NCBI GenBank assembly: GCA_002269645.1
Contig: NIVC01002100.1
Location: 1-64,000, forward strand
DNA length: 64,000 nt
Direction of reading: 5' to 3'
Origin: Macrostomum lignano
Taxonomy: Eukaryota
A program made the position numbers and the translations under genes. The notes beneath the pieces are model-generated. The model saw nothing but the letters and a program-made list of their open reading frames with translations, made no database searches and had not been told where the DNA came from. Positions 1-44,900 of this stretch are shown here, in pieces; the stretch's first letter is position 1; each line of letters begins with the position of its first letter.

Positions 1-2972
1 ATGGTTGAAGGTGTTGTCCTAAGCAACAACCTATATGGACTCAAGAGGGAAGTGCACAGCGATCAATGGCCACCACCTGAAGAAATACCACAAATAGGTG
101 ATTTCAATAATTTCTAATATTTTAAGAGTAATTTTAGGCTCTTATAGAATAATATTAAAGTTCAAGTTCAAATTGGCGTCATCTAAAGTACTTGGTATGA
201 ACTAGAGACTAAAAAAGGTTTCTAACTTGACTAACTAAAAACTTTGTGATTTAGAGCAATATAAACTTAATGGAAGATCTAGAAAATAGGACTTAAATGA
301 TTGATAATTTGATAATTTGATAATTCAATTATCAATTAATTGCAAACAATTGATTGCAAGTTTGATAATTCAACATATGCTCAAAATTTATTTGCGTATC
401 TTTAAATGTGCAGGATTTATCTCAAGGACAGGCTAAATTAGTTATTTGCAGTTAATTTACTTTTCATATCAAGTCTTATAAAGTGCATTAATTAATTTTA
501 TGTATGACGAGTACAATTCATTCAGTTCTGAATTGTTGTCTTTTTGTTGAAAAGTACTTTGCAGTAATGATTTATTGTCTACTTGCAATGTTGTTGGAAT
601 ATTTTAGGATGAATAAAATAAGGCATAAGATACTCATAGTTTCTGCTCAGTGAGTGAGAGAATTCAAGATAACCAAATGAGTTTAGATAATTGAAAAGTA
701 TTTGGCCAAATACATTTGTTGTCTTTTTTCATTCAGCCTTCGCCAAATTTGTCCATGTTGAATTTCTGTCGCCGAATTTGCATGCATCCATTAACTATTA
801 TGATTATTTCAATAAAATATATGCAAAAATAGTTCCAATGATTATAATTTAACAGGTTCAACATCCAAAATGTGCAGGTTTCAATAGCTTGTTATCTTAT
901 AATGATGGTATTGCTTTAAAAATTTGAAACTATATTAAATTGATACTTTCTTTCTTTTACTAAAGGCTACCCACTAGTTTTATAATCAAATACATTTGAT
1001 ACATTTTGATACATTTGATTAAAACATTTGATGTGATACCCTAAATTATGTCAGAAGTACAACCACAATGTACAATTTTTATTAGAAAAAGATAGTGGCT
1101 ATCCTAAAGTGAATTCTATAAATATAAAATTAAAAATAATATGTAGGCCTATGTTCATATAAAGTTTTGTCTATATCAAAAAATCTATAAAATCTACAAT
1201 ATAAAAGCTGTTGCCAGATCATCTGTTTCTAATTTGACTGCCACTGGATCATCTGTCACTAAATTGTCAAGTCACCAGATTGACTAGAAGCCAATCTTTA
1301 TTAGGCCTATATAATGACATTGTATATAATATATAATCACCTAATATAGTATCCAAGGCAAAAAAAGAAATGAATTGTAGACATAAGACATAGACATGGC
1401 AATGAGAAGTAGTAGGTAGGCCCTAGGTATGAGTTATGAAAAAATTTAATATTAATATAAATTTATAATTATATAGGCCTATTATTTTTTGGTAGTAGGC
1501 CTAGGAGTCTAGGACAAAATGATAAAGCTTTAATCAATTTTCTTTAAGTTCAAGACAACTATTATGAAATGGTTTAAATTATGCCTAAAAATACCAAGTA
1601 GGCCTATATTTAGTATAAGCTTAGTTAAGCCAACCAAAGTTTTATTGAAAAAATATATACATAACACATTGTACCCGTACAATTGATTGCTCAGTTCAAC
1701 TAGTTCAATTTTCAGTGCTTTTTAATTTTTCGTACCAATCTGGGTCTTAGACTCAGAATTAGTTAGTTCTGGTGTTGACTGGGTTTTCAACATCTGGACT
1801 GGACTGGTTTGACTGGATTTGACTGAATGGTGTCAGTGTGTCGTGTCGTGTCACGTGCGTCAAGAAATTGACATCCATTTTTATACTAATTCAAAATAAA
1901 GTAAGTTTCTCTGAATTTTGACGTTTAATTGCAGTTATTAAAACACTGGATTTACATGTAAAATTTAACAAACATCTCAAGACAGTATTAGCAAATACAG
2001 TTGATTAAGTGTCTTTTTACGATAAGCATCGATGCGTAAGCAGAGTATACTTTATTAATTAATATACTCAACTTCTAAGCGTAGCAAGGTCCAAAGAAAT
2101 CTTTTTAAATATTGCTTTGTATAGCTTTTCTAGACGGTTTTTCTCCACTCATTTTATCTACGGCGCTTGTACTTGTACGTCAAATTTATTGTAAAATTCT
2201 ATAATGCTTCAATATTTACAAAAACTAAGCAAAATCTGAACTATTATTGATCACTTTCACAAGGACTTCTAGACTAGACTAAGGGGTCGTACTATAAAGC
2301 TATAAAGCGTAAGTTGTATCGTACGTCGGAACTTTTACACTGCGGAGATAGGGGCTAAGAACGATCTTATCTTACGATGGCTTTATAGAATGGGGCCTAA
2401 GTCTGGAAGTCCTTGCACTTTCATTTGGCGAACACAACAGCTAGTATAATTTGCATTTTGCCGGGGACTTCAAGTGTAGATTAGTCACTCATTGTCAGCC
2501 AATCATGTATGTCAGCGTTACCTAGCTAACTTTAATTGGCCCTGTTTTGGAGTGGGGTGGTGGGGCAGAGGATTGGCAGTGGGTGCAGCAGGGTTGGTAT
2601 AGCTGTGGGTGGCTCTTTATACCCGAGTTTTTTGTTTGCAGGCTTGTACTTCGCTCTCTCGTTCATCTAATTTTTTTTGCCTTTGTCTCTATCTACACTG
2701 TACCGGAATAATTCTTTTTTAATCAGATCTAACGTTATTCCTAGATAAATTCATAATGCATGCAAGTTGATATCTTTATTATCTTTCCATACATGTATAT
2801 ATTCTTTAGAAATATTTCATTACAGCTGCTTATAAACGTTACAAAACGCTTCTTCTGTCTTCAAAATACTTTTTGCATCAATTGATGTATTGGGGGGGGA
2901 ATAGCTAATGTAAAATTTACACACAGCAGGGAATGATGCTGAGAGGGACTGTATTCAAAGATACATGTAACA

Positions 2973-3491
2973 ATGAGGGCTCTTTGCGTCTGCCTGTTGG
3001 TGTCTCTGGCCCTGTCCGTGAACTAAATTAACTCCGCCGTGACGCCTCGCAGTGCGGCAGACAACAGGCAAGAGGTTCGGATCTGATCTACAGCGTTGCA
3101 AATGGCGATTATTTGTTCGTCAGCAAGGACAAGAGGGGCAGCGCGCCGGACAATTTGGTCAAGAGAACATCGTTGAGAACATCGGCGAGTCGAGCAAATC
3201 GGTTCCTCCTGCAGCACGGCGGCAATAACCGCTACGGCATCTACAACCCGAGCTCCGATGGCTCACGTGGTCCTGCCTCACCCAAGAGAAGCCATCAAGC
3301 AGAGGAACGAGTTCGTATTTGAGAGCGTCGGGCACAATCGCTCTGTGATATTCAACCCCAGCTATGGTAAATATCTGTTTGCGTCAAAAAGCCTTCACAA
3401 CGTAGACAATAACCTTGTGCTCAGTCATAAATCTTGGTTCGATTGCCGCAACAGGTTCACTCTGATTCTGCACGACGAGCCTTGTTCCTAG
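2973..3491 (+). pseudogene. Disrupted secreted protein with three ~45-aa repeats (beta-trefoil/lectin-like fold inferred)
   Basis: ATG 2973 gives signal peptide MRALCVCLLVSLALSVN, then TAA at 3024-3026. Downstream frames encode IYSVANGDYLFVSK..DNLV..ANRF / IYNPSS..(gap)..HVVL..RNEF / IFNPSYGKYLFASK..NNLVL..RNRF, with a frameshift near 3255. Confidence 0.6.
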
Positions 3492-4750
3492 TCTGTATAA
3501 ATTGAGAGAACTTCATTAAGTGCACCTGAGCTCTCGCACCTGATCAGAGACCGAACGATGCATCTGATAACTTTCAGATTGGGTTAAATCCAGGACTAAT
3601 TAATGACTTAATTGTTTAACAATTTTTTGATACCTACATGTAAGCAAGTTAAGATGACTACTTTGATGCAGTGTAATGTAGATTGATCTGATACGTTGTC
3701 TACGGTATAGAGCTTCTCGATGAATTTAGGCTCAATTAGTTCGCTTTTATACCGAGTTGTTGCAAACAGAACGAAGATTTGCATGGATTACACGTCTGTA
3801 TTGGCTCCTGCTGCTTTTCCAGAATATACATGTAGGGAACAGCTTTTTGTCTATGGGGAGTCTGGAGAGCAGCAGAAATGCTTGAGTTCGATGTCTGATT
3901 CAAATAGAACCAAATGTTGGTCTTAACCTACCTGTTTCTGATTCAGGAAAAAAGAACACAGCTACTATATACGTTATAATTAGGCAGTTTCCGTTTTTTA
4001 TTCACAAAAATCAACAAAATCTTACCTTTAGAACTCTTGTGGATCGCAACTGGCTTTACTATGACCAGGTGGCAATGCTGACAAATGTTTAATTTGTTTC
4101 CTGAAACTTCGTTTGGCTTGTACAAGCTGGCCCTTGGCGGGTTTGGCCCATAGATTTTTGGGCACTGGAAGCAATATATAGATATGTCTATGCTTCCTAG
4201 GCCGAAACGCGGCACAAATACCTTATGGTAACATATGTAATTTGTCAATGCAACAACAGCATCAGCAACAACAATAACAACAACAACATCACAATATACT
4301 GTCAGGTCTTATAAAATACGCGTCTCTGGACTGGGTCGTCTAGATCTTTAGTCTTGTAGTCCTCCGTAAATACAGAAGACAACGACAGGCAACACGAGCC
4401 GTTTGGGCGGACAGATAAGAGGGCTCTGGGTGTGCAGGACGGGCGGTGTGCAGAAGAAGAATTGCATTCAATTAAAGATTAATTGAAATCTTGAACCTAG
4501 AATTTACATGCGCATCTACGAGATACATTAATTTCGTAGTTTTTGTTTACTACTACTTTCTAGTCATGCAGTAGGCGGGATCGCTTAAAACGGTAAAATG
4601 AATGCTGGTTAAATACCACAATACAATTAAACTGCTCAGTCAGCCAGCACGCGGAGGCGAAATAATATAGACACTACTTAGTCATCGTATGATTATTCAC
4701 GGTTATCAACCCATCCCATCCAAAAACCTGATTTGATCTGTCTATCTATC

Positions 4751-4920
4751 CTAGCTTCAGCAAAAAAATTATGCTATTTACGTTTCTTGCTTTGAGAACT
4801 ATTGTTCTTTTTAGTAAATATACCATCGAATCCTTCTAGCTTCAGCGATAAAAATATTTTATGCAATTTACGTTTCTTGCTGTGAGAACTATTGTTCTTT
4901 TTAGTAAATATACCATCGAA
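4751..4920. repeat. ~85-bp direct tandem duplication
   Basis: ctagcttcagc...ataccatcgaat starts at 4751 and again at 4836. Confidence 0.85.
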
Positions 4921-5271
4921 TTGTACAATTTTGCAGACTATTAGCAGAGCCTTTCAAACGGATGCTTGAAAAAAAATAGTCGACGATATAGAATCAGAAT
5001 CAACGATACACTATTTGTGGGATAATGTACAAATTAAATCCAGAATGAATTTCTTCGATAAAACTTGGTCTTTGCCTAAAACTAGCAAAAATAAAGTTGC
5101 AAGCCACTGAACGCGCAAAGGAGTTGCTAGAATTGTAGCAGTCGATTACGAAGCTATTAGTATTTATTTTGGTACCAAATTAATTGACAATTAAAACCAT
5201 AAAACTGAAATGGATGATGCATCGTTCAGCCTCTGATCAGGTGAGAGCCGCCCGGGTCAGTCAGCGAGCGC

Positions 5272-5481
5272 TCAGGTGCAGCGGTACATGCGGGGATTGT
5301 AGCAGTGCGTGCCGCACTTGCGATGACCGACCGGGCACAGGAAGTAGCCATTGATGCAAGTGTGCGTCCTCGGGCTGTAGCAGGTGCCGCCGCAGGACCG
5401 GTCGCCGCCACCGCAGGCGTCAGTAGAGTTCACAGACACGGCCAGCAGAACCAGCAGGCAGACGCAGAGAGCCTTCATCAT
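5272..5481 (-). CDS. 69-aa secreted Cys-rich peptide, CBM52 (Carb_bind)-like
   Basis: Hydrophobic signal MMKALCVCLLVLLAVSVNS; mature part has 8 Cys with two CGxxCYxPxxxxC half-repeats joined by GYFLCP; intronless; TATA box upstream and AATAAA downstream (plus-strand tttatt 5163-5168). Confidence 0.8.
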   Translation of the reverse strand: MMKALCVCLLVLLAVSVNSTDACGGGDRSCGGTCYSPRTHTCINGYFLCPVGHRKCGTHCYNPRMYRCT

Positions 5482-5621
5482 CTTGAGTAGAGGTGTTGAT
5501 GCGGTGAGTAGTGGAATGCTGCAGAACCGATGCGGACTTTTATTCTGTAGGGCCTCTGGTCGGTGCTTGCTGAGTTGCTAAGTGGCTGCTGGCTTGCACC
5601 GTCGCCTCAGTCCGCCGCTTG

Positions 5622-5629
5622 TATTTATA
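5622..5629 (-). promoter_or_regulatory. TATA box of the secreted peptide gene
   Basis: TATAAATA on the minus strand ~140 nt upstream of ATG 5481. Confidence 0.5.
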
Positions 5630-6055
5630 GACTGCGGCCAGAGGCTTGGGGTTGAAGGGTGGAGTGGGGTGGGGGCCATCAGAACACGAAAAACCCCCTC
5701 TGTGAAACCCGCCAGCCAATCAAATTTTGTTTTAAAGACAAGAGCAGACTGTGGTGAGGGGGCGGGGTGCTGGGTCAGCTAGTAATTGATCCAAGCCCCT
5801 GGTGTGTGTGCACATCTACAAATACTATAGTAAAAGCTTATCTTGGTTGGTTAGTACAGCCCTGGCTTAAGCGTTGACGATCGCGTTTTCATTCTCTGCT
5901 AAGTAAATATTGATAGTTTGCAAACGTAAACAAGCTCGTCATTCTTGCATTCAGCTCAATATAATTATAGCTGATACTCGTATTACGCAATAGTCACCCC
6001 AAGTTAGGCTTCGCAAATTCAGAATGCTCTATATGATAATAAATAAATGCAGCTA

Positions 6056-6322: not shown

Positions 6323-6499
6323 TACATGTATATTTAAACCCAACGACAGGACAAGATTGTTGCCAATTTCAAAGATCAAAGTCCAGCGCAGATGGTATAT
6401 GCAGCTGATGCTCAGCTCGTTCTTCATCAAAACATTTCTCATCGGATTCACTGGATTCTTCGTTACTTATTTTATAAGATGAATATAGTGGAACGAAGG

Positions 6500-6785
6500 G
6501 ATCGGGGTGATGGGATGAAGGGGATCAGAGTCAGTGGATGAAGGAATCAGAGTCCGTGGATGAAGGAATCAGGGTCCGTGGATGAAGGGATCGGGGTGAT
6601 AGGATGAAGGGGATTAGAGTCAGTGGATGAAGGAATCAGGGTCCGTGGATGAAGGGATCAGGGTCCGTGGATGAAGGGATCAGGGTCCGTGGATGAAGGG
6701 ATCAGGGTCCGTGGATGAAGGGATCAGGGTCCGTGGATGAAGGGATCAGGGTCCGTGGATGAAGGGATCAAGGTCAGCGGGTGAG
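6500..6785. repeat. 22-bp minisatellite (gtggatgaagggatcagggtcc)n
   Basis: Tandem units directly visible. Confidence 0.9.
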
Positions 6786-7795: not shown

Positions 7796-10700
7796 ATGAT
7801 GCTGTGTTGTTTGAGCTGTAGAGATGATGCTGTGAGCTGTAGAGATGATGCTGTGTTGTTTGAGCAGTAGAGATGATGCTGTGTTGTTTGAGCTGTAGAG
7901 ATGATGCTGTGAGCTGTAGAGATGATGCTGTGTTGTTTGAGCAGTAGAGATGATGCTGTGTTGTTTGAGCAGTAGAGATGATGCTGTGAGCTGTAGAGAT
8001 GATGCTGTGAGCTGTAGAGATGATGCTGTGAGCTGTAGAGATGATGCTGTGTTGTTTGAGCAGTAGAGATGATGCTGTTTGAGGTGTAGAGATGATGCTG
8101 TGTTGTTTGAGCTGTAGAGATGATGCTGTTTAAGCTGTAGAGATGATGTTGTGTGAGCTGTAGAGATGATGCTGTGAGCTGTAGAGATGATGCTGTGTTG
8201 TTTGAGCAGTAGAGATGATGCTGTTTGAGGTGTAGAGATGATGCTGTGTTGTTTGAGCTGTAGAGATGATGCTGTTTAAGCTGTAGAGATGATGTTGTGT
8301 GAGCTGTAGAGATGATGCTGTGAGCTGTAGAGATGATGCTGTGTTGTTTGAGCAGTAGAGATGATGCTGTGTTGTTTGAGCAGTAGAGATGATGCTGTTT
8401 GAGCTGTAGAGATGATGCTGTGAGCTGTAGAGATGATGCTGTGAGCTGTAGAGATGATGCTGTGTTGTTTGAGCAGTAGAGATGGTGCTGTGTTGTTTGA
8501 GCAGTAGAGATGATGCTGTTTGAGCTGTAGAGATGATGCTGTGTTGTTTGAGCTGTAGAGATGATGCTGTTTGAGCTGTAGAGATGATGTTGTGTGAGCT
8601 GTAGAGATGATGCTGTGTTGTTTGAGCAGTAGAGATGGTGCTGTGTTGTTTGAGCAGTAGAGATGATGCTGTTTGAGCTGTAGAGATGATGCTGTTTGAG
8701 CTGTAGAGATGATGCTGTGTTGTTTGAGCAGTAGAGATGATGCTGTGTTGTTTGAGCAGTAGAGATGATGCTGTTTGAGCTGTAGAGATGATGCTGTGAG
8801 CTGTAGAGATGATGCTGTGAGCTGTAAAGATGATGCTGTGTTGTTTGAGCTGTAGAGATGATGCTGTTTGAGCTGTAGAGATGATGCTGTGTTGTTTGAG
8901 CTGTAGAGATGATGCTGTGTTGTTTGAGCTGTAGAGATGATGCTGTTTGAGCTGTAGAGATGATGTTGTAAGCTGTAGAGATGATGCTGTGTTGTTTGAG
9001 CAGTAGAGATGATGCTGTGTGAGCTGTAGAGATGATGCTGTGAGCTGTAGAGATGATGCTGTGAGCTATAGAGATGATGCTGTGAGCTGTAGAGATGATG
9101 CTGTTTAAGCTGTAGAGATGACGCTGTGAGCTGTATAGATGATGCAGTGAGAGCAGTAGAGATGATGCTGTGTTGTTTGAGCTGTAGAGATGATGCTGTT
9201 TGAGCTGTAGAGATGATGTTGTGAGCTGTAGAGATGATGCTGTGTTGTTTGAGTAGTAGAGATGATGCTGTTTGAGCTGTAGAGATGATGCTGTGAGCTA
9301 TAGAGATTATGCTGTGTTGTTTGAGCTGTAGAGATGATGCTGTTTGAGCTGTAGAGATGATGTTGTGAGCTGTAGAGATGATGCTGTGTTGTTTGAGCAG
9401 TAGAGATGATGCTGTGTGAGCTGTAGAGATGACGCTGTGAGCTGTAGAGATGATGCTGTGAGCAGTAGAGATGATGCTGTGAGCTGTAGAGATGATGCTG
9501 TTTAAGCTGTAGAGATGACGCTGTGAGCTGTATAGATGATGCAGTGAGAGCAGTAGAGATGATGCTGTGTTGTTTGAGCTGTAGAGATGATGCTGTTTGA
9601 GCTGTAGAGATGATGTTGTGAGCTGTAGAGATGATGCTGTGTTGTTTGAGCAGTAGAGATGATGCTGTGTGAGCTGTAGAGATGATGCTGTGAGCTGTAG
9701 AGATGACGCTGTGAGCTGTAGAAATGATGCTGTGAGCTGTAGAGATGATGCTGTGAGCTGTAGAGATGATGCTGTTTAAGCTGTAGAGATGACGCTGTGA
9801 GCTGTAGAGATGACGCTGTGAGCTGTAGAGATGATGCTGTGAGCTGTAGAGATGACGCTGTGTTGTTTGAGCTGTAGAGATGATGCTGTTTGAGCTGTAG
9901 AGATAATGTTGTGAGCTGTAGAGATGATGCTGTGTTGTTTGAGCAGTAGAGATGATGCTGTGTGAGCTGTAGAGATGATGCTGTGAGCTGTAGAGATGAC
10001 GCTGTGAGCTGTAGAAATGATGCTGTGAGCTGTAGAGATGATGCTGTGAGCTGTAGAGATGATGCTGTTTAAGCTGTAGAGATGACGCTGTGAGCTGTAG
10101 AGATGACGCTGTGAGCTGTATAGATGATGCTGTGTTGTTTGAGCTGTAGAGATGATGCTGTGTTGTTTGAGCTGTAGAGATGATGCTGTTTGAGCTGTAG
10201 AGATGATGTTGTAAGCTGTAGAGATGATGCTGTGTTGTTTGAGCAGTAGAGATGATGCTGTGTGAGCTGTAGAGATGATGCTGTGAGCTGTAGAGATGAT
10301 GCTGTGAGCTATAGAGATGATGCTGTGAGCTGTAGAGATGATGCTGTTTAAGCTGTAGAGATGACGCTGTGAGCTGTATAGATGATGCAGTGAGAGCAGT
10401 AGAGATGATGCTGTGTTGTTTGAGCTGTAGAGATGATGCTGTTTGAGCTGTAGAGATGATGTTGTGAGCTGTAGAGATGATGCTGTGTTGTTTGAGTAGT
10501 AGAGATGATGCTGTTTGAGCTGTAGAGATGATGCTGTGAGCTATAGAGATGATGCTGTGTTGTTTGAGCTGTAGAGATGATGCTGTTTGAGCTGTAGAGA
10601 TGATGTTGTGAGCTGTAGAGATGATGCTGTGTTGTTTGAGCAGTAGAGATGATGCTGTGTGAGCTGTAGAGATGACGCTGTGAGCTGTAGAGATGATGCT

Positions 10701-12759
10701 GTGAGCTGTAGAGATGATGCTGTGAGCTGTAGAGATGATGCTGTTTAAGCTGTAGAGATGACGCTGTGAGCTGTATAGATGATGCAGTGAGAGCAGTAGA
10801 GATGATGCTGTGTTGTTTGAGCTGTAGAGATGATGCTGTTTGAGCTGTAGAGATGATGTTGTGAGCTGTAGAGATGATGCTGTGTTGTTTGAGCAGTAGA
10901 GATGATGCTGTGTGAGCTGTAGAGATGATGCTGTGAGCTGTAGAGATGACGCTGTGAGCTGTAGAAATGATGCTGTGAGCTGTAGAGATGATGCTGTGAG
11001 CTGTAGAGATGATGCTGTTTAAGCTGTAGAGATGACGCTGTGAGCTGTAGAGATGACGCTGTGAGCTGTAGAGATGATGCTGTGAGCTGTAGAGATGACG
11101 CTGTGTTGTTTGAGCTGTAGAGATGATGCTGTTTGAGCTGTAGAGATAATGTTGTGAGCTGTAGAGATGATGCTGTGTTGTTTGAGCAGTAGAGATGATG
11201 CTGTGTGAGCTGTAGAGATGATGCTGTGAGCTGTAGAGATGACGCTGTGAGCTGTAGAAATGATGCTGTGAGCTGTAGAGATGATGCTGTGAGCTGTAGA
11301 GATGATGCTGTTTAAGCTGTAGAGATGACGCTGTGAGCTGTAGAGATGACGCTGTGAGCTGTATAGATGATGCTGTGTTGTTTGAGCTGTAGAGATGCTG
11401 TTTGAGCTGTAGAGATGATATTGTGAGCTGTAGAGATGATGCTGTGTTGTTTGAGCAGTAGAGATGATGCTGTTTGAGCTGTAAAGATGATGCTGTGAGC
11501 TATAGAGATGATGCTGTGTTGTTTGAGCTGTAGAGATGATGCTCTTTGAGCTGTAGAGATGATGTTGTGAGCTGTAGAGATGATGCTGTGTTGTTTAAGC
11601 AGTAGAGATGATGCTGTGTGAGCTGTAGAGATGATGCTGTGAGCTGTAGAGATGATGCTGTGTTGTTTGAGCAGTAGAGATGATGCTGTGTTGTTTGAGC
11701 AGTAGAGATGATGCTGTTTGAGCTGTAGAGATGATGCTGTTTGAGCTGTAGAGACGATGCTGTGTTGTTTGAGCTGTAGAGATAATGCTGTTTGAGCTGT
11801 AGAAATGATGTTGTGTGAGCTGTAGAGATGATGCTGTGAGCTGTAGAGATGATGCTGCGTTGTTTGAGCTGTAGAGATGATGCTGTGTGAGCTGTAGAGA
11901 TGATGTTGTGAGCTGTAGAGATGATGCTGTGAGCTGTAGAGATGATGCTGTGAGCTGTAAAGATGATGCTGTGTTGTTTGAGCTGTAGAGATGATGCTGT
12001 TTGAGCTGTAGAGATGATGCTGTGTTGTTTGAGCTGTAGAGATGATGCTGTTTGAGCTGTAGAGATGATGTTGTGTGAGCTGTAGAGATGATGCTGTGAG
12101 CTGTAGAGATGATGCTGTGTTGTTTGAGCAGTAGAGATGATGCTGTTTGAGCTGTAGAGATGATGCTGTTTGAGCTGTAGAGATGATGCTGTGTTGTTTG
12201 AGCAGTAGAGATGATGCTGTGTTGTTTGAGCAGTAGAGATGATGCTGTGTGAGCTGTAGAGATGATGCTGTGAGCTGTAGAGATGATGCTGTGAGCTGTA
12301 AAGATGATGCTGTGTTGTTTGAGCAGTAGAGATGATGCTGTTTGAGCTGTAGAGATGATGTTGTGAGCTGTAGAGATGATGCTGTGCTGTTTGAGCAGTA
12401 GAGATGATGCTGTGTGAGCTGTAGAGATGATGCTGTGAGCTGTAGAGATGACGCTGTGAGCTGTATAGATGATGCAGTGAGAGCTGTAGAGATAATGATG
12501 TGAGCTGTAGAGATGATGCTGTGAGCTGTAGAGATGATGCTGTGAGCTGTAGAGATGATGCTGTGTTGTTTGAGCAGTAGAGATGAGGCTGTGAGAGCTG
12601 TAGAGATGATGCTGTGAGCTGTAGAGATGATGCTGTGAGAGCTGTAGAGATGATGCTGCGTGAGCTGTAGAGATGATGCTGTGTGAGCTGTAGATGATGC
12701 TGTGAGCTGTAGAGATGATGCTGTGAGCTGTAGAGATGATGCTGTTAGAGCTGTAGAGA
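7796..12759. repeat. ~5-kb satellite of 21/23/28-bp variants (gagctgtagagatgatgctgt[gttgttt])
   Basis: Period 21 at 7991/8012/8033 with +2 and +7 length variants; higher-order structure present. Confidence 0.97.
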
Positions 12760-13393: not shown

Positions 13394-15163
13394 TCAGACC
13401 CCGGCATCCTGGACGACGCGGGCTCCGTCGCGATGCTCGCCGCCAAGCCGCTGGTCCCCGTCCTCCTCCGCGTCTCCGGCCTTCCCGCCAGCTCCGCGCC
13501 GCGCGCGACAAAAGCCGAACAGCCGGCGCTGCAGCCGGACGTGCAGGTTGGGGTTGGCCAGGATGTAGATGAAGAAGTTCATAGCCGAGTCCAGGATAGT
13601 CATGATGTTCGCCAGCTTCATCAGGCAGGCGCTGGCCGGAGCGCTGGGATCCAGGATGACGAAGGCGGCGTCCAGCTTGGACAGGAAGGTGGGGAACTCG
13701 AACAGGAAGAACACAATGGACAGCGCCACCACCGTGCGGTTGGCCGGCGAGATGGAGAAGCGGCGACGACGCTGGCGACGAAGGCCAGACGCGATGCTCT
13801 CGGAGTCGGCTGACACGGAGGCTGCGCCGGAGGCGGCGGCAGCGGCGGCGGCGGCGGCGGAGACCTGCAGCTGGCGCTGGCGCCTCCTGTCGGCGCGGAT
13901 GACGGCCCAGGAGATGACGGCGGAGGAGGCGGAGACGATGATGATGGGGCCGCCGGACTGCAGCAGGAACAGCAGCACGGTCAGGTAGGCCACCGAGTAG
14001 GCGGGGCTGAGCAGCAGCGGCGAGGGCAGCTGGTCCGCGAACTGGCCCGAGTCCAGGCAGAACACGTAGACGAACTCGAAGGCCCGCGGCAGCCCCAGGA
14101 AGAAGGCGAGGCCGGTGGCCAGGGGGAACACCGGGCAGTTGAGCCGGCGGCTCCAGGTGTGGTACAGGCGGTGCGGCGATGCCACGGCGGCCAGGCGCAG
14201 CAGGGCGATGAACACCACCGTCCAGTTGCGGAGGCACTGCGACCAGGCGACCAGCGGCACGCTGAGGCTCATCAGCACGGCCAGGAAGCGCGCCAAGCCG
14301 GATGAGGGCACCTGCGGCGGTGCGTGGCTTAGTGACATGTACTTTACGTTGCGCATGCTCTAGGCATTAGAAAGTGTTCACATCGAACTTTTGCTCTTTA
14401 ATCGCACCCGAAGCTACGCAACGATAAGCGGATTTTGCATGATAGGCTTCAACAGTACATGTACCGATATATGTTGCATAGTGCAGTTTTGCAGCTCTAG
14501 GTAGATAATTCTAAGTAAGGTGGCTTATTGAATGGACCAATGCTCTACATGCAGTCTAAGTCAGTACTCTCTGGTTCTCAGCCAATGTCCTGTATGAGGA
14601 AAATCCACCTCTCCTCCAAGGCTGAGCTGCAATTTCGCATTTTATTCATTTTCCCTAAGGCCCGGCCTCCCATATCATGGATGAAAACTGCTGATACGTG
14701 TCTGGAACCATGCGTTTGGAGTGACTTTTCAATTTCACAGAAGACAACCCCAAGCTAAGCATAATAATTTAGTAATTCTTCACACCTGAAGCCGCTGCGT
14801 GAGCAGCAGCAGGTAGAGGAAGAAGTGCAGGAACAGCGCCAGGTTGAAGGCGATCTCCACGGCGGCCAGGCGGAGCAGCAGCCGGAGGTTTCGGCGCAGT
14901 CCGCGTCCGCGGCCCCCGTTGCCGACGGCGCCCCCGCCGACCCTGGCGCGCAGCTGTCGATGGCACAGGGCGAGGCCCCAGGCGTTGACCAGCACGTTGA
15001 CGACGGCCAGGCCGGGGGTGGAGAAGTTGTACAGCCGCTCCAGGTTGTGCAGAGGCTGGCGCTGGCTCAGGTTGGAGCAGGAGACGCCGCGGGACCACAG
15101 GTCCTCTGCGTCCGAGGAGTTGTCGACCAGCAGCAGCCACTGGCCCAGCGATAGGTCTGACAT
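13394..15163 (-). CDS. Rhodopsin-family (class A) GPCR, peptide-receptor-like; 2 exons (14786-15163, 13394-14311), ~431 aa
   Basis: Seven hydrophobic segments; TM1 VVNVLVN, TM6 VFFLFEFP, TM7 LDSAMNFFIY; phase-0 intron 14312-14785 with CAG|GTGTGA donor and CCGCAG acceptor joins both ORFs in frame. Confidence 0.85.
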
Positions 15164-38900: not shown

Positions 38901-41900
38901 ACGGAGGAACTCCTTCACCGGGTCCACCTCCTCCAGGCCCCCGAAGTTCTTGGTAGCGCAGCGCAGGGTGACGGCGGCCCCGTCGGCGGCGTCTGGGGCA
39001 GTCGCAGAGCGGCGCGAGTCCTTCACCAGGCTAAAGAAGTCGCGCAGGCCGAAGAACTCGCGGCCAACTCGATCAATAGCGGTCTTGTGGATCTGGGGAA
39101 CAACAGGGGTGGGCGAGATTGACTGGACTGACTGACTGACTGATTGACTGGACTGGAGCAAACATTAGGATGGCATCATCTGTCAGGGGAGCACACATCA
39201 GGATGGGATCAAAGCTCGCCAAGCCGCTCTCTTCACCCTGATGAGCAACCAGCCTGCTCACCCCGAGGTAGAACTCGGCCAGGCGATCCCAGTCCTCCGA
39301 CTTTCCGTCTCTGCAGATGCCCCTGGCTGTGGCCACCAGCTCGTTGCGATCCGGCACGTCCCGCTGCACGTAGAGGCCGCGGTTCATCTTGGCCGGGTCC
39401 AGCGCCCAGTTGGAAATGCCGACGAACGCCACCTTGCGGCACTCGGGCGGCAGCGACTCCTCGCTGTCCTCGTCGGCTGGCCCCGCCTCCTCGATGCAGC
39501 CGTCCTCCAGCAGCGGGTGTAGACTCTTCAACGGCATGTCCGGGCTGTCCTCAGCGAGGCCGACCTCCTCCAGCACCACGACGGCGACAAACTCGTCCTG
39601 CGGTTTGCCTCTCTGCAGCATGGCGCACTGCTGGAAGGTCTGGATGATGCCGTCCGAGGTGGACCAGGGCGAGCACTGGAAGGCCAGCATGTGGGTGTTC
39701 GGCAGCTCCTTGTAGGCGTCGGAGGCGGAGTTGCGGCCCAGCATGCGGCTGCGCACGATGGTCTTGGCAAGGGACTTGGAGCTGCCCGGCTTGCCCACCA
39801 GGAACAGCGGCAGGCGCAGGCTGATGCACACCACCATCATGAACACGTTCTCGCGCAGGGCGCCGTTCTTGGAGATGCCTGGCGGCAGGGGCACCTCGTT
39901 GCTGATAAACACCTCTTGGCACCGTTTCAGCAGCTCTTCAATTTGCAACGGGCTAAGGTTGTCAAAGCAGGTGTGGCGCCGCAGTAGCTTTGCCAGTAGC
40001 TTTATATAATCCTCCTTGAAGGCAGCGCTGAGGCGGCTCAGGTAGCAGACGGACATGGCAACAATGAGCGCGCAGGTAATCTTATTGACGGTAGGCTCTC
40101 TGTGAGCTGCATGGAGTCTGCGGTAGCCGAACGCCCAGTTCATCACCCGCAGCGCCTTGTCGACTTCCCGCAGCGACACGAAGCGGCTCTCGTCGCTGAA
40201 GCCGCGCATGAATCGCTGCGACTCGCAGACGGCGTCGGCCACGGCGTCAGCGTGCGGCCGCGCCTCAGCGGGCAGGCCGGACTTGAGCATCCGCAGGGCG
40301 TACTGGCTCTCGGCCTCGCTGGACAGGCTGCCAAAGTCCCACAGCAGGCTGACCAGGCTGAGCGGCATTGGCCGCACCCGGTAAACCAGGTGGCGCATCG
40401 GCAGGTCGCCGAAGCGGTCGGCAGTTTCCTCCTTGCGCACCCGGTAGCCAAGCCCGCTGCTCTCCAGCCGGTCGATCATCTCGTCCGTGTGCCGCCTGTA
40501 GGGGTTGCAGGCCGCCACGAAGCGCAGGCAGCCGTCGGGGTCCACCGGGTGGCCGTGCAGGCGGCGGTCGCACATGACCTCCTTGATCAGGCCGACAGCA
40601 TTGGTGCTGTTTACCTCGTCGAAGAACAGAATCGTGAACAGGCCCGGCACCAAGCGGCTGTTCTTGCGGGCGAGCCTCTCCGCCCGACGGACGGCGTCTT
40701 CGATGGCCCGCTCTGTGGTGCCTCCGTGCACCTTCAGCACCAGCATGTTGTCCACGCCTTCAGCGCTCTGCGGCAGCATCAGCCGGGCCAGGAAGCGGAC
40801 CAGGCGAGTCTTGCCGCAGCCGGTCTCGCCCATGACAACCACCGGCAGGTTGCAGCGGAAGCGCATGTACACCGCCAGCATCTTGCGCGCGTTGTCCGCT
40901 GTCAGCTCGTAGGATGGGTCGGGATCGGCCGTGTTTTCGGAGCCGAGGATGCGGCGCAGACAGTCGAGCTTGTCCGTCCGGCTGCGGTTCTCGAAGTTGT
41001 CGCTGAGAGGCGCGCGGTTTCGCACAAGGGCCTGCACCAGGGCCTGGGTCATGACACCGCGGCGCAGCACCTGCCCGGTGGCCACGCCGATCAGGTTGCC
41101 GGCCGCGTCCACGGAGAAGCCAACAAAGGAGAAGGTGCAGTCGTGGTTAAAGAACAGGTAGGGGTGGTCCTCGTCCTCCCAGTGGCGGCGCAGGGCGAAC
41201 TGCTCGATCCGCTCCGGCCCGGCGTCCTCCTCCTGTGCAGCCCGGCCGGTGCCCGCGCTGGCGCTCTCGTCGGCAATGCGCAGCGACCGGGTGGCGAAGT
41301 CCTTCGCCATGAGCAGCATCGAGTCCACCACGAACTGGCGAAAGCCCGGCAGGTCCTCCTGGGCCGCGGCGCTGCAGAAGTCTGACTCCTCGAAGTCGCG
41401 CAGCTGGCGATCGAGGAAGCGGCAGAAGGTGGCCAGCTCCAGCCAGCTGGGGTCGCGGAGGCCGCAGTTGCCAGTCAGCGTTTCTAGGGCCGCCACAGCT
41501 GTGACGGGAGCAGCGTTCACCTGTCGCAGAAGGTGGCGCGCCGGCCGCTGAATCCAGTCATCGGCGAGGCTCAGCTCGTCCCAGAAGCAGCCATCGGATC
41601 CGGACGCGGCTCCGGCGCGCATGCGGCCGAGGGTTTCCGCCGGCGTGACGCAGCGGACGGTGGGCAGGAAGCGGATGGTCTGCAGCGCGCCGAGCCGCAG
41701 CGGCGAGTGCTCCAGCAGAAAGACGTCGCGGGGTGACCGCCGCCAGACGAAGCCCTTGGAGCTCCGCAGGGCACCGAGAAGCAGCAATTGAGCCAGCGCC
41801 TCGTCCAGGTCTTCGCGAACCTCCCTGGCGATGTCCAGGTGAAACACCCTGCGCGTCACTGCCGCTTCGCTGTCGGTCGCGTCCGCTGAGCACAGAAATT

Positions 41901-44900
41901 CGTACAGCCGGTTCGGCTCAAACGTGGCGGCATGCCAGGAAAAAATCCGCGGCTTGGCCGGCCCGGCCAGGCGCTGGCAGCGCAGCGACTTGCCCATGCC
42001 GGGCCTCGCCGACGTCACCAGCGTAACCTGCGCCGCCGACTCAGCGCCTCCGAGCTGGCCGCACGCCCACGCCACGACCTCCCGCTCCGAAGGCACGCGG
42101 ACAGCGTCCTGTACGAAATGGCCGAGGGCGGCGCACAGAGGCCCGCCGGAGCGGCGTCCGGCTTCCGTGAGCACAGCCAGCAGTCGGCTGGAAGAGGAGG
42201 CGCCCGAACTGAACTGGTTGAGCAGCTGCGTGAGATGCGACTCAGCGCAGCAGCTGAGCTCATAGGGCAGCCGTTCCGCCCATAGCAACACGAACAGACG
42301 GTCGGGGCGGCCAGCAGCCGAAGGGCTCAGCGCCCGGTCGAGAAAGAGACGCAGCTCCTCTCGCTCAGTTCTACGGCTGCAGCAGAGAACCTCAGCGGGC
42401 AGCGGCAGTCGGTTGAAGGCCAGGCGAAATGCGTCCAAGCAGGTGAGCAGCTGCTGGCCCTCCGGCATCGACACGGCAGTCAGCCCGGGCAGAGGCAGCA
42501 TCGACAGCGGCGTCGGAGCCAGCGAAGGCGACATTCGAGGGGCCTCCAAGTTGTCCAGGAACTGCGCCAGCTGACTGAAACTCAGCGACCGGAAGCTCGC
42601 AAGCTGCCCGCCGGTGCCGTCCAGGAAGCGCCGCCACACAGGCGTCAGAACCTCGGCCACGCCGGCTGCATAAGACGGAGCCGATTCGCATGGAGACGCA
42701 CAGGGAGACTCGATCGCAGAGTCAGTGGAAGCTCCCAGCACTGCCTGCAGGGTCGTGACTGCCTCTTCGGCTGTAGCATTGGGGACGGCGAACCGCAGTA
42801 GGTGAAGCAGGCTGGGACACGGCCGGTCCTGCTCGAGCAGCTCCTCGGCCAGGTGAGTCTGCAGGAACCGCAGCTGCCTGGCGCCGAACAGGTTGAGCAC
42901 GGGATGCTGCCGCCGCTCCGCTGCCACCCGCTGCTGCCACTCCTCCCGGCAGGTTAGCAGGAACTCCACGGCCTGCCGGATGCCGTTAATCGGGTCGGCC
43001 ACGGTGAAGCGGTCGGAGCGAGGCCGCAGGCGCTGACTCAGCTTCAGAGTCAGATTGTCTACCGAGCCTGGCTTGAGCAGGGCCTCGACTGTCAGGTTCT
43101 CAAACAGAGGACAGCAGTCGCTGCCCAGGCCATCGCACAGACTGACCAGCCTGGCGAACAGATTGGTGAGCTCGATGAAGCTGTTGAACATGGCCTGGTC
43201 AGCGTCCGACTGGCCGATGATCAGCATGAGCTTCGACTGCAAGTCCTGCACGTCCTCCAAAGCCAGGGTCCGGCCGTCGATCTCCAGCTCGAACTCGGTG
43301 GGGTCCCGGGCCCGCACTCGCAGCTTGCCGGCTGTGGCAACAGCCTTCACCCTGCTGACGGTGCTCCGCTCCACGGTGCCCTTGCTGGAGTTGACCTCCT
43401 GAAGCCAGTCAACGCGATCGCTTGAGTCCAAGAGATGCTGCACCAGCAGGCAATTCTGGCAGTCCTTGGCGCCGGGCTGGCAGGCCTTCGCGCAGGCCTG
43501 GCACGGCTTCAGCACCCGCTGAGAGTTCTGTTGGATTTGCTGCAGAGTCACCTGGCCATCGCAGCTCAGCAGGTCGTAGATCAAAGGCTCGAAGCCGACA
43601 ACAGCCTGGTAGAAGCACTCGATCTTGGCCTGCTCCATCGCGCCTGCGTCACCGGTGTAAATCATGGCCAGGTCGAAGAAAGTTTTCAGATCGTCCTTCT
43701 TCAGGTGTTGCCGAGTCCACTTCACCAGCTCGTGAGCTTTCCCGAAGGCTTCCAGGACTTCCAGCAGCATGGGCTCGCGCAGCATGTCCTTTAGCAGTTC
43801 ATTCGCCTCCAACTTGCTGACCCGGATGTCCTTGAACTTCAGCGTATCCGCGGTCGCCTCCACCTCTGTGAGGTCCTTGAGCTTGTCGTCCATGTCAATG
43901 CTGTAGTTCTGGTAGATAGTGCACAGAGCAGCGCACAGCCGATCATTCTTAGTCTTGCTGCGGATGAAGTTGATTTTGCGTCTGAGACTGTCGACCTCTC
44001 TCTTTATCAGTCCCGCAGTCGCCAGTTCTGCTTCAAGCTTTTTAGCGTCCTGGAAAATCTCCTCGCCAAGGAAACGCTTGGCAGCATCGACCGTCATGTC
44101 CTCATCTTTTAGCCGCTTCACTTGGCGCTTCCATTCAGCCACGGCTACTTGGATCGTGTCCAGCACCGCGTTAGCGTCCAGGCACTGCTCCTCCGCAGCC
44201 GTCTCCTCAGCAGCCTGCTCGGTCTCTTCAAGCACAATTTCCTCAATCGCGACCTCCTCAGCTTCAAGACGGTCATCCAGGCCGCAGTAGCGGCTGCGAA
44301 CGCGAGAGCGAAGGAGTTCGGCAAAGCTGGCGCTGCGGCTGAAGAATCCCGACTTTCGAATGTTGGCCAGCAGGCTCCGATGCTTCTCGTCGATTCCGAA
44401 GGCTACAAGCTGCAGCGCCCAACGCTCGCCCGCCTGTTGCACCGTCAGATCGCCGATTCGCATGCGCTGCAGAGCCGCCAAAGGCTTGCGCACTGCCGCA
44501 ATGTCGTCTAAAAAAGAAAATTTTCAGAGGGAGTACTGCGGGTGTTGGATAAGATTTATACAGCGCTTCTGGCTGCCGTCGAATCCAAACTTTTTGATAT
44601 ATACTTAGCAACACTGAAAAGTCGCCACTCTATGCGCCAGTGAGCAATTTCTCTTGGACTATTCTGAAATATAAAAGATAAAAGAAAACTCATCGGGGCA
44701 GCTTAAATCCGTCCAACCCTCGCACACCGCTCGCCCCACATCATTCCTCAACTCAAGTCTGCCGCGGCGTAGCTGAGTTGCGTCACTCGCAAAGATTGAG
44801 AGACTTAACCTGCCATCTCAAAAGTGGCGACCACAGACGGAATCTTCTGTGATGGCGACTTTTCGTTGTTGCTAAGTATACTCTCAGCTCGCAAGCAATG

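What the first reader, a model, noticed from the sequence alone, without database searches (positions are those of the whole stretch)
5272..5481. Stand-alone secreted CBM52-like mini-protein in an animal
The mature sequence CGGTCYSPRTHTCINGYFLCPVGHRKCGTHCYNPRMYRC follows the spacing I recall for CBM52/Carb_bind (CG...Y.P....C..G.FLCP....C...CY.P..Y.C). That is the beta-1,3-glucan-binding module known from fission-yeast Eng1 endoglucanase and other fungal proteins. Here it has no catalytic domain, no intron, and has a signal peptide, TATA and polyA signal. It could be a glucan-sensing or antifungal defence peptide, possibly horizontally acquired (inference).
Basis: partly seen in the sequence, partly recalled or inferred. 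Interest (0 to 1): 0.75.

Follow-up and report, generated by a model that had tools for sequence, protein, structure and literature searches.

The report
Secreted CBM52-type mini-protein, flatworm gene
A flatworm (Macrostomum lignano) carries a small intact gene for a secreted 50-residue, eight-cysteine peptide that is one carbohydrate-binding module of the fungal CBM52 type; the call is correct, but the module also occurs in tardigrades and rotifers, nothing points to recent gene transfer, and its function is untested.

Summary
Window 5481→5272 (− strand) is an uninterrupted 69-codon ORF with a signal peptide and an eight-cysteine mature peptide. It matches Pfam PF10645 Carb_bind (CBM52) at 36.3 bits against a cut-off of 25, with E = 6.6e-9. 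A TATA box, an inverted CCAAT box and an AATAAA signal are in place.

The DNA is Macrostomum lignano. The gene sits on three contigs of assembly GCA_002269645.1. One of those copies has a 1-nt frameshift. GC3 is 0.83, like neighbouring host genes.

The module is two C-x6-C-x3-C-x7-C half-repeats. AlphaFold2 models it confidently (pLDDT 94.6) as β-hairpins, with no counterpart in the PDB.

Relatives are many, and small secreted forms are common. They occur in chytrids, Piromyces, tardigrades, bdelloid rotifers and many unlabelled metagenome proteins. Some are fused to GH16 or GH64 β-1,3-glucanases.

Recent horizontal transfer is not supported. The signal peptide and 3′ end are shared with a disrupted neighbouring paralogue.

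The best reading is a secreted lectin-like peptide that probably binds β-1,3-glucan. Defence and food handling are both possible roles, and neither was tested here. It is a new member of a known kind and of modest interest.

The parts
5716..5720 (-). Inverted CCAAT box (reads ATTGG on the gene strand), about 90 nt upstream of the TATA box
   Evidence: Read directly from the sequence. A consensus match only.
5622..5629 (-). TATA box TATAAATA, 148 nt upstream of the ATG
   Evidence: Read directly.
5482..5598 (-). Presumed 5' UTR. The start is inferred at about 30 nt below the TATA box. It has no upstream ATG. It contains an AATAAA hexamer at 5544-5539 and a TTCTGCAG acceptor-like site about 40 nt before the ATG, which could serve SL trans-splicing.
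   Evidence: Read directly. The transcription start and trans-splicing are inferences.
5272..5481 (-). Complete intronless CDS, 69 codons plus TGA
   Evidence: GC3 is 0.83 against GC1 0.49 and GC2 0.57.
5425..5481 (-). Signal peptide, residues 1-19 (MMKALCVCLLVLLAVSVNS). Cleavage after S19 or A22.
   Evidence: Hydrophobic core and small residues at -3/-1. No predictor was run.
5275..5424 (-). Mature peptide, residues 20-69: 50 aa, 8 Cys, 5 aromatic residues, pI about 8.7-8.9, net charge about +4 to +5
5275..5397 (-). Match to Pfam PF10645 Carb_bind (CBM52), residues 29-69
   Evidence: 36.3 bits, cut-off 25, profile positions 1-45 of 49.
5356..5415 (-). Half-repeat 1, C23-C42: C-x6-C-x3-C-x7-C with core CGGTCYSPRTHTC
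5278..5337 (-). Half-repeat 2, C49-C68: same spacing, core CGTHCYNPRMYRC
5163..5168 (-). Polyadenylation signal AATAAA, 104 nt after the stop codon
   Evidence: Read directly.
2973..3564 (+). Convergent paralogous locus B. It has the same signal-peptide coding (2973-3024, 87% nt identity) and the same last codons plus start of the 3' UTR (3521-3564, 91-94%). Its core is replaced by about 465 nt of unrelated sequence and its reading frame is broken.

Best explanation
This is a resident, intact M. lignano gene. It encodes a 69-aa pre-protein: a signal peptide plus a 47-50-aa cationic peptide. That peptide is one complete CBM52-type (PF10645) module, built from two 4-cysteine half-repeats with a CG..CY.P....C core. 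SHOWN: the ORF and its signals, family membership by Pfam's threshold, host-like codon usage, several near-identical genomic copies, and a confident all-beta model. INFERRED: the peptide is secreted, forms four disulfides, and uses its conserved Tyr/Phe residues to bind a beta-1,3-glucan, as the two tested family members do. It has no catalytic domain, so any effect must come from binding alone. It would coat, agglutinate or flag beta-glucan-bearing material outside the cell, or change that material's accessibility to enzymes. Candidate materials are fungal or oomycete walls, or the beta-1,3-glucan storage polymer of the worm's diatom food. My estimates: real gene encoding a CBM52-family module, about 0.85; beta-1,3-glucan as the ligand, about 0.4-0.5; a specifically antifungal or immune role, about 0.2.
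For: ORF, TATA, CCAAT and AATAAA. Pfam Carb_bind at 36.3 bits against 25. The peptide matches every majority-consensus position of an 81-sequence module alignment: C, CG, CY.P, C, G, LCP.G, CG, CY.P, Y.C. AlphaFold2 gives pLDDT 94.6 with six short strands. GC3 is 0.83, equal to host genes. Four near-identical copies show no substitution in the CDS. The gene is embedded in animal-type DNA, with an Mrt4/Ribosomal_L10 gene with introns and a GPCR-like ORF nearby. Homologous modules are fused to beta-1,3-glucanase families GH16 (Piromyces cluster) and GH64. The Eng1 CBM is needed for activity on insoluble glucan and for septum targeting (PMC3627985). [quoted passage not shown]
Against: No transcript or protein evidence could be obtained. 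The database holds this exact protein only on genome contigs, and no paper mentions it. Binding was not tested. Homologous modules are also fused to astacin and papain proteases, fasciclin and CBM96, so the ligand need not always be beta-1,3-glucan. The family grades into galaxin-like and IGFL repeats. One genomic copy is frameshifted. The neighbouring paralogue is disrupted, so the small local family may be decaying.
Confidence: 0.55

Rival explanations
1. It is a minimal member of the broad animal galaxin-like/IGFL-like cysteine-repeat superfamily. On this reading it acts as a cationic antimicrobial or matrix peptide, and its activity does not depend on beta-1,3-glucan.
For: The mature peptide is small, disulfide-rich and cationic, at +4 to +5. 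Six of the 149 hits also match Galaxin_repeat, with best E = 7.7e-20, and five match IGFL. The tardigrade relative P0003 weakly matches both Carb_bind and Galaxin_repeat. Some hits mix CC...CY.P and CG..CY.P units in one protein. Peptides from cationic squid galaxin repeats inhibit bacteria (PMC12773714). Animal relatives are fused to an astacin protease or sit among trypsin and serpin genes.
Against: The protein itself gives no Galaxin_repeat hit at E <= 10, and IGFL scores only 11.1 bits against 25, whereas Carb_bind passes. It has no di-cysteine. Its per-module scores are slightly higher against fungal-type FLCP modules than against the tardigrade and rotifer repeats.
Confidence: 0.25
2. 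It is a silent or decaying ORF that makes no functional product, left over from a local duplication.
For: There is no expression evidence. One of the four copies carries a 1-nt deletion at window position 5328, which produces the annotated 84-aa frameshift product P0002. The adjacent paralogue B has an in-frame stop and frame breaks in all copies.
Against: Three copies keep the full ORF, with all eight Cys and every consensus residue. The codon-position GC pattern is strong and host-like. Promoter and poly(A) elements are intact and there is no upstream ATG. The single deletion could be a long-read assembly error.
Confidence: 0.12
3. It is a recent horizontal acquisition from a fungus or other microbe, or contaminating DNA in the assembly.
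For: Characterised CBM52 members are fungal. The distribution among animals looks patchy: flatworm, tardigrade, bdelloid rotifers. The gene is intronless. Its modules resemble the fungal FLCP type slightly more than the other animal repeats.
Against: GC3 equals that of host genes. The gene lies on a 310-kb contig beside intron-containing eukaryotic genes. Its signal peptide and 3' UTR are shared with a local paralogue. No hit outside M. lignano exceeds about 56% identity. The difference between the best labelled non-animal and animal modules is 4-6 bits. From my own knowledge, about 30 bits is the margin usually required for an HGT call. No close relative was found in JGI metagenomes.
Confidence: 0.05

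Closest known systems
Schizosaccharomyces pombe Eng1 C-terminal module (founder of CAZy CBM52 / Pfam PF10645)
   Same: Same Pfam family by the gathering threshold. The unit is a cysteine-rich module of about 50 aa.
   Different: [quoted passage not shown] The flatworm protein is a single module with no enzyme, in an animal. Direct alignment to Eng1 was not done because its sequence was not in hand.
Magnaporthe oryzae GBP (MGG_05232)
   Same: Signal peptide plus CBM52 and no catalytic domain. [quoted passage not shown] This is the nearest functional analogue.
   Different: It is a fungal protein that acts on the fungus's own wall and is larger. The flatworm has no glucan wall, so any target must be foreign material or food.
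Multi-repeat proteins of the tardigrade Hypsibius exemplaris (OWA54156.1; an astacin fusion; a WAP-named protein) and of the bdelloid rotifers Adineta ricciae and Didymodactylos carnosus
   Same: Animal proteins built from the same C-x6-C-x3-C-x7-C / CG..CY.P unit. They are the best whole-protein hits. The tardigrade genes lie in intron-containing loci among trypsin and serpin genes.
   Different: They have 6-24 half-repeats in 330-970-aa proteins, some fused to a protease. Several fall below the Pfam cut-off. The flatworm protein has only two half-repeats and no intron.
Galaxin / galaxin-like repeats (PF24748) and the IGFL family (PF14653)
   Same: A shared ...C(Y/F).P....C core in cysteine-rich secreted repeats. 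Some relatives match both models. Squid galaxin repeats are cationic and antibacterial.
   Different: Galaxins are defined by di-cysteines, which are absent here. Neither model matches this protein at its threshold.
Invertebrate beta-1,3-glucan recognition proteins (GNBP/betaGRP, N-terminal CBM39). This comparison rests on my own knowledge.
   Same: Secreted animal proteins whose role is to bind beta-1,3-glucan without hydrolysing it. That is the role proposed here.
   Different: Their fold is an unrelated beta-sandwich of about 100 aa, and they are linked to protease cascades. No sequence relation exists and no such cascade is known for this peptide.

Membership tests
Pfam PF10645 Carb_bind / CAZy CBM52 | Score at or above the curated gathering threshold of the family model | tested here: met
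   36.3 bits against 25, E = 6.6e-9. PF10645.15 is also precomputed for this exact protein.
Pfam PF10645 Carb_bind / CAZy CBM52 | Near full-length coverage of the model and the conserved cysteine/aromatic framework (CG..CY.P....C..G..LCP.G...CG..CY.P..Y.C) | tested here: met
   Profile positions 1-45 of 49 are covered. All majority-consensus positions of an 81-sequence alignment are present. The spacing C-x6-C-x3-C-x7-C occurs twice.
Pfam PF10645 Carb_bind / CAZy CBM52 | Binding to beta-1,3-glucan | not testable with these tools
   Shown only for Eng1 and M. oryzae GBP. Here there is only indirect support from GH16 and GH64 fusions among homologues.
Pfam PF10645 Carb_bind / CAZy CBM52 | Module appended to a carbohydrate-active enzyme (the strict CAZy sense of a CBM) | tested here: not met
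   The ORF ends one residue after the module and there is no catalytic domain. Stand-alone members are nonetheless known and common.
Pfam PF10645 Carb_bind / CAZy CBM52 | Match to the dbCAN CBM52 model, or direct similarity to Eng1 repeats | not tested
Galaxin-like repeats (PF24748) | Model match and di-cysteine (CC) repeat signature | tested here: not met
   No hit at E <= 10. There is no CC in the sequence.
IGFL family (PF14653) | Score at or above the gathering threshold | tested here: not met
   11.1 bits against 25, E = 0.43.
Horizontally acquired gene (recent) | Foreign composition, a much better non-metazoan than metazoan match, and no host-type paralogues | tested here: not met
   GC3 is 0.83 against host genes at 0.82-0.91. 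Labelled fungal modules score 34.6-39.2 bits and the tardigrade module 33.2 bits. A paralogue shares the signal peptide and 3' UTR. Most hits carry no taxon label, so the test is weak.

The most novel reading that the evidence does not exclude
A flatworm secretes a minimal 50-residue beta-1,3-glucan-binding peptide as an innate-immune or food-handling lectin. That would be a class of animal beta-glucan recognition molecule unrelated to GNBP/betaGRP, Dectin-1 or Factor G. It would also suggest that the CBM52-galaxin-IGFL continuum seen here reflects glycan-binding modules more generally, which would give galaxins and IGFL proteins a testable biochemical function.
Probability: 0.15. Interest if true: 0.7.

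Novelty: new member of a known kind. Interest (0 to 1): 0.35.

Why it matters
In the full-text search, all CBM52 literature concerned fungi or microbial enzymes. No structure is solved. A 50-residue single-module form that can be synthesised and is confidently modelled would be a convenient object for the first CBM52 structure and for binding studies. If it binds beta-1,3-glucan, it would point to an unstudied route of fungal or algal glycan recognition in flatworms, and perhaps in tardigrades and rotifers. It would also link a fungal CBM family to the poorly understood galaxin-like repeats of animals. If it does not, it is one more lineage-specific secreted cysteine-rich peptide.

Tried and rejected
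1. The word-indexed homologue searches gave almost nothing. The single-sequence search found only the two M. lignano entries. The 81-module profile found the same two. The 149-protein alignment timed out. A 20-protein alignment added only two tardigrade proteins. The taxonomic picture therefore rests on 30 cluster look-ups, and most hits remain unlabelled metagenome proteins.
Bacterial occurrence rests on one proteobacterial MAG cluster with a weak module match.
3. A metagenome scan for close relatives found none.
4. The PDB sequence search gave only chance hits, to a gap-junction protein at E = 1.7. The Foldseek search of the PDB gave nothing at E < 3.7. No structural homologue could be named.
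5. Literature searches for Carb_bind and Mlig018268 returned nothing. 'Macrostomum lignano' plus 'glucan' returned nothing relevant.
6. It is kept as a superfamily-level rival.
7. The core of neighbouring locus B gave no Pfam or PDB match. My impression that it looks like a beta-trefoil is unverified.
8. Comparing the copies for signs of selection was uninformative. The four copies are identical in the CDS apart from one indel.

Full report
**Observation.** The ORF exists exactly as described: window 5272..5481 on the minus strand, 69 codons from ATG to TGA. The product is MMKALCVCLLVLLAVSVNSTDACGGGDRSCGGTCYSPRTHTCINGYFLCPVGHRKCGTHCYNPRMYRCT. A Pfam scan gives PF10645 Carb_bind, the Pfam counterpart of CAZy CBM52. 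The score is 36.3 bits against a curated cut-off of 25, with E = 6.6e-9. Residues 29-69 cover profile positions 1-45 of 49. The other weak matches are far below their cut-offs: IGFL 11.1 bits, Nodulin_late and ATE_N. The Galaxin_repeat model does not appear at all at E <= 10. After correcting for the 979 stop-to-stop segments of at least 30 aa in the window, the E-value is still about 6e-6. The double eight-cysteine pattern occurs once in all six frames.

**Gene anatomy.** These features are read directly on the minus strand.
- An inverted CCAAT box lies at 5720-5716.
- TATAAATA lies at 5629-5622, 148 nt upstream of the ATG.
- There is no upstream ATG between the TATA box and the start codon.
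- The ORF runs uninterrupted from 5481 to 5272.
- AATAAA lies at 5168-5163, 104 nt after the stop.

Two caveats apply. An AATAAA hexamer also sits in the presumed 5' UTR at 5544-5539. A TTCTGCAG acceptor-like site about 40 nt before the ATG could be used for spliced-leader trans-splicing, which I know to be common in this species; this is inference.

The N-terminus has a basic start, a hydrophobic core (mean Kyte-Doolittle 3.0) and small residues at VNS and TDA, as expected for a signal peptide. No predictor was available. The mature peptide is 47-50 aa with 8 Cys and 5 aromatic residues. Its pI is 8.7-8.9 and its net charge is about +4 to +5. The cysteines are spaced C-x6-C-x3-C-x7-C, then x6, then the same spacing again. 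The 'module' is therefore an internal duplication of a 4-Cys unit of about 20-26 residues with core CG..CY.P....C.

**Organism and copies.** The exact protein is encoded on two contigs of the Macrostomum lignano assembly GCA_002269645.1. These are NIVC01001342.1 (310 kb) and NIVC01004792.1 (35 kb). A third contig, NIVC01005137.1, encodes an 84-aa frameshift version annotated as BOX15_Mlig018268g3. In an alignment of the window with the three loci, the CDS has no substitutions. The only difference is a 1-nt deletion at window position 5328 in the third contig. This could be a real pseudogenised copy or a long-read error.

The surroundings look like an animal genome. An intron-containing Mrt4/Ribosomal_L10 gene lies about 7 kb downstream of the gene. 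A weak rhodopsin-type GPCR-like ORF and a large AAA-ATPase ORF lie in the window. GC3 of the gene is 0.83, with GC1 0.49 and GC2 0.57. The Mrt4 exons have GC3 of 0.83-0.88, the GPCR-like ORF 0.91 and the AAA ORF 0.82. The codon-position signal supports a real coding sequence, and its composition is that of the host.

**Structure.** AlphaFold2 on an 81-sequence module alignment gives mean pLDDT 94.6, with six short beta-strands arranged as hairpins. Neither a profile search of PDB sequences (best E = 1.7, chance hits) nor Foldseek against the PDB (best E = 3.7) finds a solved counterpart. CBM52 seems to have no experimental structure.

**Relatives.** An exhaustive HMMER scan of 1.84 billion cluster representatives gave 187 proteins at E <= 1e-3. 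Of the 149 examined, 112 match Carb_bind at E <= 1e-3.

The few hits with labels fall into these groups:
- The tardigrade Hypsibius exemplaris: a 664-aa protein made almost entirely of repeats, an astacin protease followed by 13 modules, and a 328-aa protein.
- The bdelloid rotifers Adineta ricciae and Didymodactylos carnosus.
- The chytrids Chytriomyces and Cladochytrium, and the anaerobic fungus Piromyces finnis.
- One EukProt protist.
- One proteobacterial MAG cluster with only a weak module match.

The tardigrade genes span 8.3 kb and 1.9 kb, so they contain introns, and they sit among trypsin, serpin and PAN-domain genes. They are genuine animal genes.

The homologous modules are fused to several kinds of domain: GH16 (Piromyces cluster), a GH64 beta-1,3-glucanase, CBM96, a papain-family protease, astacin and fasciclin. 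Six hits also match Galaxin_repeat (best E = 7.7e-20) and five match IGFL. Some proteins mix CC...CY.P and CG..CY.P units. At superfamily level CBM52 therefore appears to grade into the galaxin-like and IGFL repeats of animals.

Small secreted forms are common. Thirty-one of the 149 representatives are 130 aa or shorter, and most of those have a signal-like N-terminus and two or three half-repeats. The flatworm protein is among the shortest.

**Horizontal transfer.** I find no support for a recent transfer. Composition is host-like. No hit outside M. lignano exceeds about 56% identity over about 48 residues. By best single-module score, the labelled fungal modules give 34.6-39.2 bits and the tardigrade module 33.2 bits. 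That gap is far smaller than the roughly 30-bit margin that, to my knowledge, is usually required. No close relative turned up in JGI metagenomes. The gene also has a local paralogue, described next. The best-scoring modules belong to unlabelled metagenome proteins, so an ancient transfer into meiofaunal animals, or ancient common descent with losses, cannot be told apart here.

**Neighbouring paralogue (locus B).** A sequence on the plus strand at 2973-3564 is convergent with the gene, and about 1.6 kb separates it from the gene's AATAAA signal. It starts with ATG and encodes MRALCVCLLVSLALSVN, at 87% nucleotide identity to the gene's signal-peptide coding over 53 nt. It ends with ...TGCACCTGA plus 32 nt that are 91% identical to the gene's last codons and proximal 3' UTR. 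By eye, B also keeps remnants of the first mature codons (TGACGCC...GCGGC...GAC).

Between these ends, about 465 nt are unrelated to the gene. They encode beta-trefoil-looking motifs in two different frames. An in-frame TAA follows the signal peptide directly. Indels differ between genomic copies. This core gave no Pfam or PDB match.

The shared ends include the first and last cysteines of the module. In the gene these are integral to the domain, and in B they are orphaned. My inference is that B descends from a gene-like ancestor whose core was replaced, and that B is probably decaying. This argues that the gene has been resident in this genome long enough to duplicate and diverge.

**Mechanism.** What is shown: a complete, compositionally native gene for a signal-peptide-bearing single CBM52-type module. 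What is inferred: the peptide is secreted, forms four disulfides in a beta-hairpin stack, and binds long-chain or insoluble beta-1,3-glucan through its conserved aromatic residues (Y35, Y46/F47, Y61, Y66). This is by analogy with two tested members. The first is the Eng1 module, which is required for activity on insoluble substrate and for septum targeting (PMC3627985). [quoted passage not shown] The GH16 and GH64 fusions among homologues point the same way.

An animal has no glucan wall, so the target must be foreign. Two candidates are fungal or oomycete walls (defence, opsonin or agglutinin) and the beta-1,3-glucan storage polymer of the diatoms on which, to my knowledge, M. lignano is cultured (food handling). 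I cannot choose between them.

The main rival is a galaxin-like cationic antimicrobial or matrix peptide with no glucan specificity. The protease and fasciclin fusions, the positive charge and the antibacterial activity of squid galaxin repeat peptides make this plausible (PMC12773714). A silent ORF and a recent transfer are less likely.

**Novelty and score.** Pfam already recognises the module automatically on this exact protein. The family is known, stand-alone secreted members are known in fungi, and other animals carry the repeat. The flatworm occurrence and the minimal single-module form appear not to have been described in the searched literature. I rate it a new member of a known kind with interest 0.35. 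It is a useful lead for structure and binding work and for flatworm innate immunity, but not a surprise to a specialist once the tardigrade and rotifer relatives are seen.

Noticed in passing
window 2973-3564 (+): Locus B is a convergent paralogue of the CBM52 gene. It has the same signal-peptide coding and the same last codons plus proximal 3' UTR, but its core is replaced by about 465 nt that encode beta-trefoil-looking motifs in two frames. An in-frame TAA lies at 3024-3026, unless a 35-nt GT..AG segment (3018-3052) is spliced out. Indels differ between genomic copies. It is a chimeric gene or a pseudogene.
   Followed up: partly
window 2930-2946 (+); L001, L003: A 17-nt unit GGAATGATGCTGAGAGG lies just upstream of locus B. 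It is present once in the window and in L002, twice in L001 and five times in L003, so its copy number varies between genomic copies.
   Followed up: no
L003 (NIVC01005137.1), equivalent to window 5328: The third genomic copy of the gene lacks one G. This produces the annotated 84-aa frameshift protein BOX15_Mlig018268g3. It may be a real pseudogene or a long-read assembly error.
   Followed up: partly
window 7808-12759: A minisatellite of about 5 kb with a 21-24-nt unit (TGTTTGAGCTGTAGAGATGATGC) in about 210 copies, with a 72-nt higher-order period. Its strong GC skew of about 0.6 shows. It lies upstream of the gene and differs in length and sequence from L001 (84-89% identity).
   Followed up: no
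window 6495-6775 and 4751-4921: A 22-nt tandem array (12.7 copies, with an 89-nt higher-order unit) and a 90-nt tandem duplication flank the gene.
   Followed up: no
window 13394-14356 (-): A 320-aa ORF with a weak rhodopsin-family 7tm_1 match (21.9 bits, below the cut-off of 30.5) and GC3 of 0.91. It is possibly a divergent intronless GPCR gene.
   Followed up: no
window 39073-44493 (-): An uninterrupted 1806-aa ORF with a dynein-related AAA_5 ATPase domain at residues 1217-1339 and GC3 of 0.82. The rest has no Pfam match. It is a large uncharacterised gene or a mobile-element protein.
   Followed up: no
hits P0003-P0150 (not in the window): The CBM52 module family overlaps with Pfam Galaxin_repeat and IGFL. 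Six hits match Galaxin_repeat and five match IGFL, and some single proteins mix di-cysteine galaxin-type and CG..CY.P units. This suggests one superfamily that Pfam treats as separate families. Fusions to astacin, papain, fasciclin, CBM96, GH16 and GH64 were seen.
   Followed up: partly
L005 2859-3731 (-) (Hypsibius exemplaris MTYJ01000209.1): A GH19 chitinase gene lies 4-5 kb from a tardigrade protein that carries the repeat, alongside serpin and trypsin genes. This may be a cluster of secreted defence or digestive genes.
   Followed up: no
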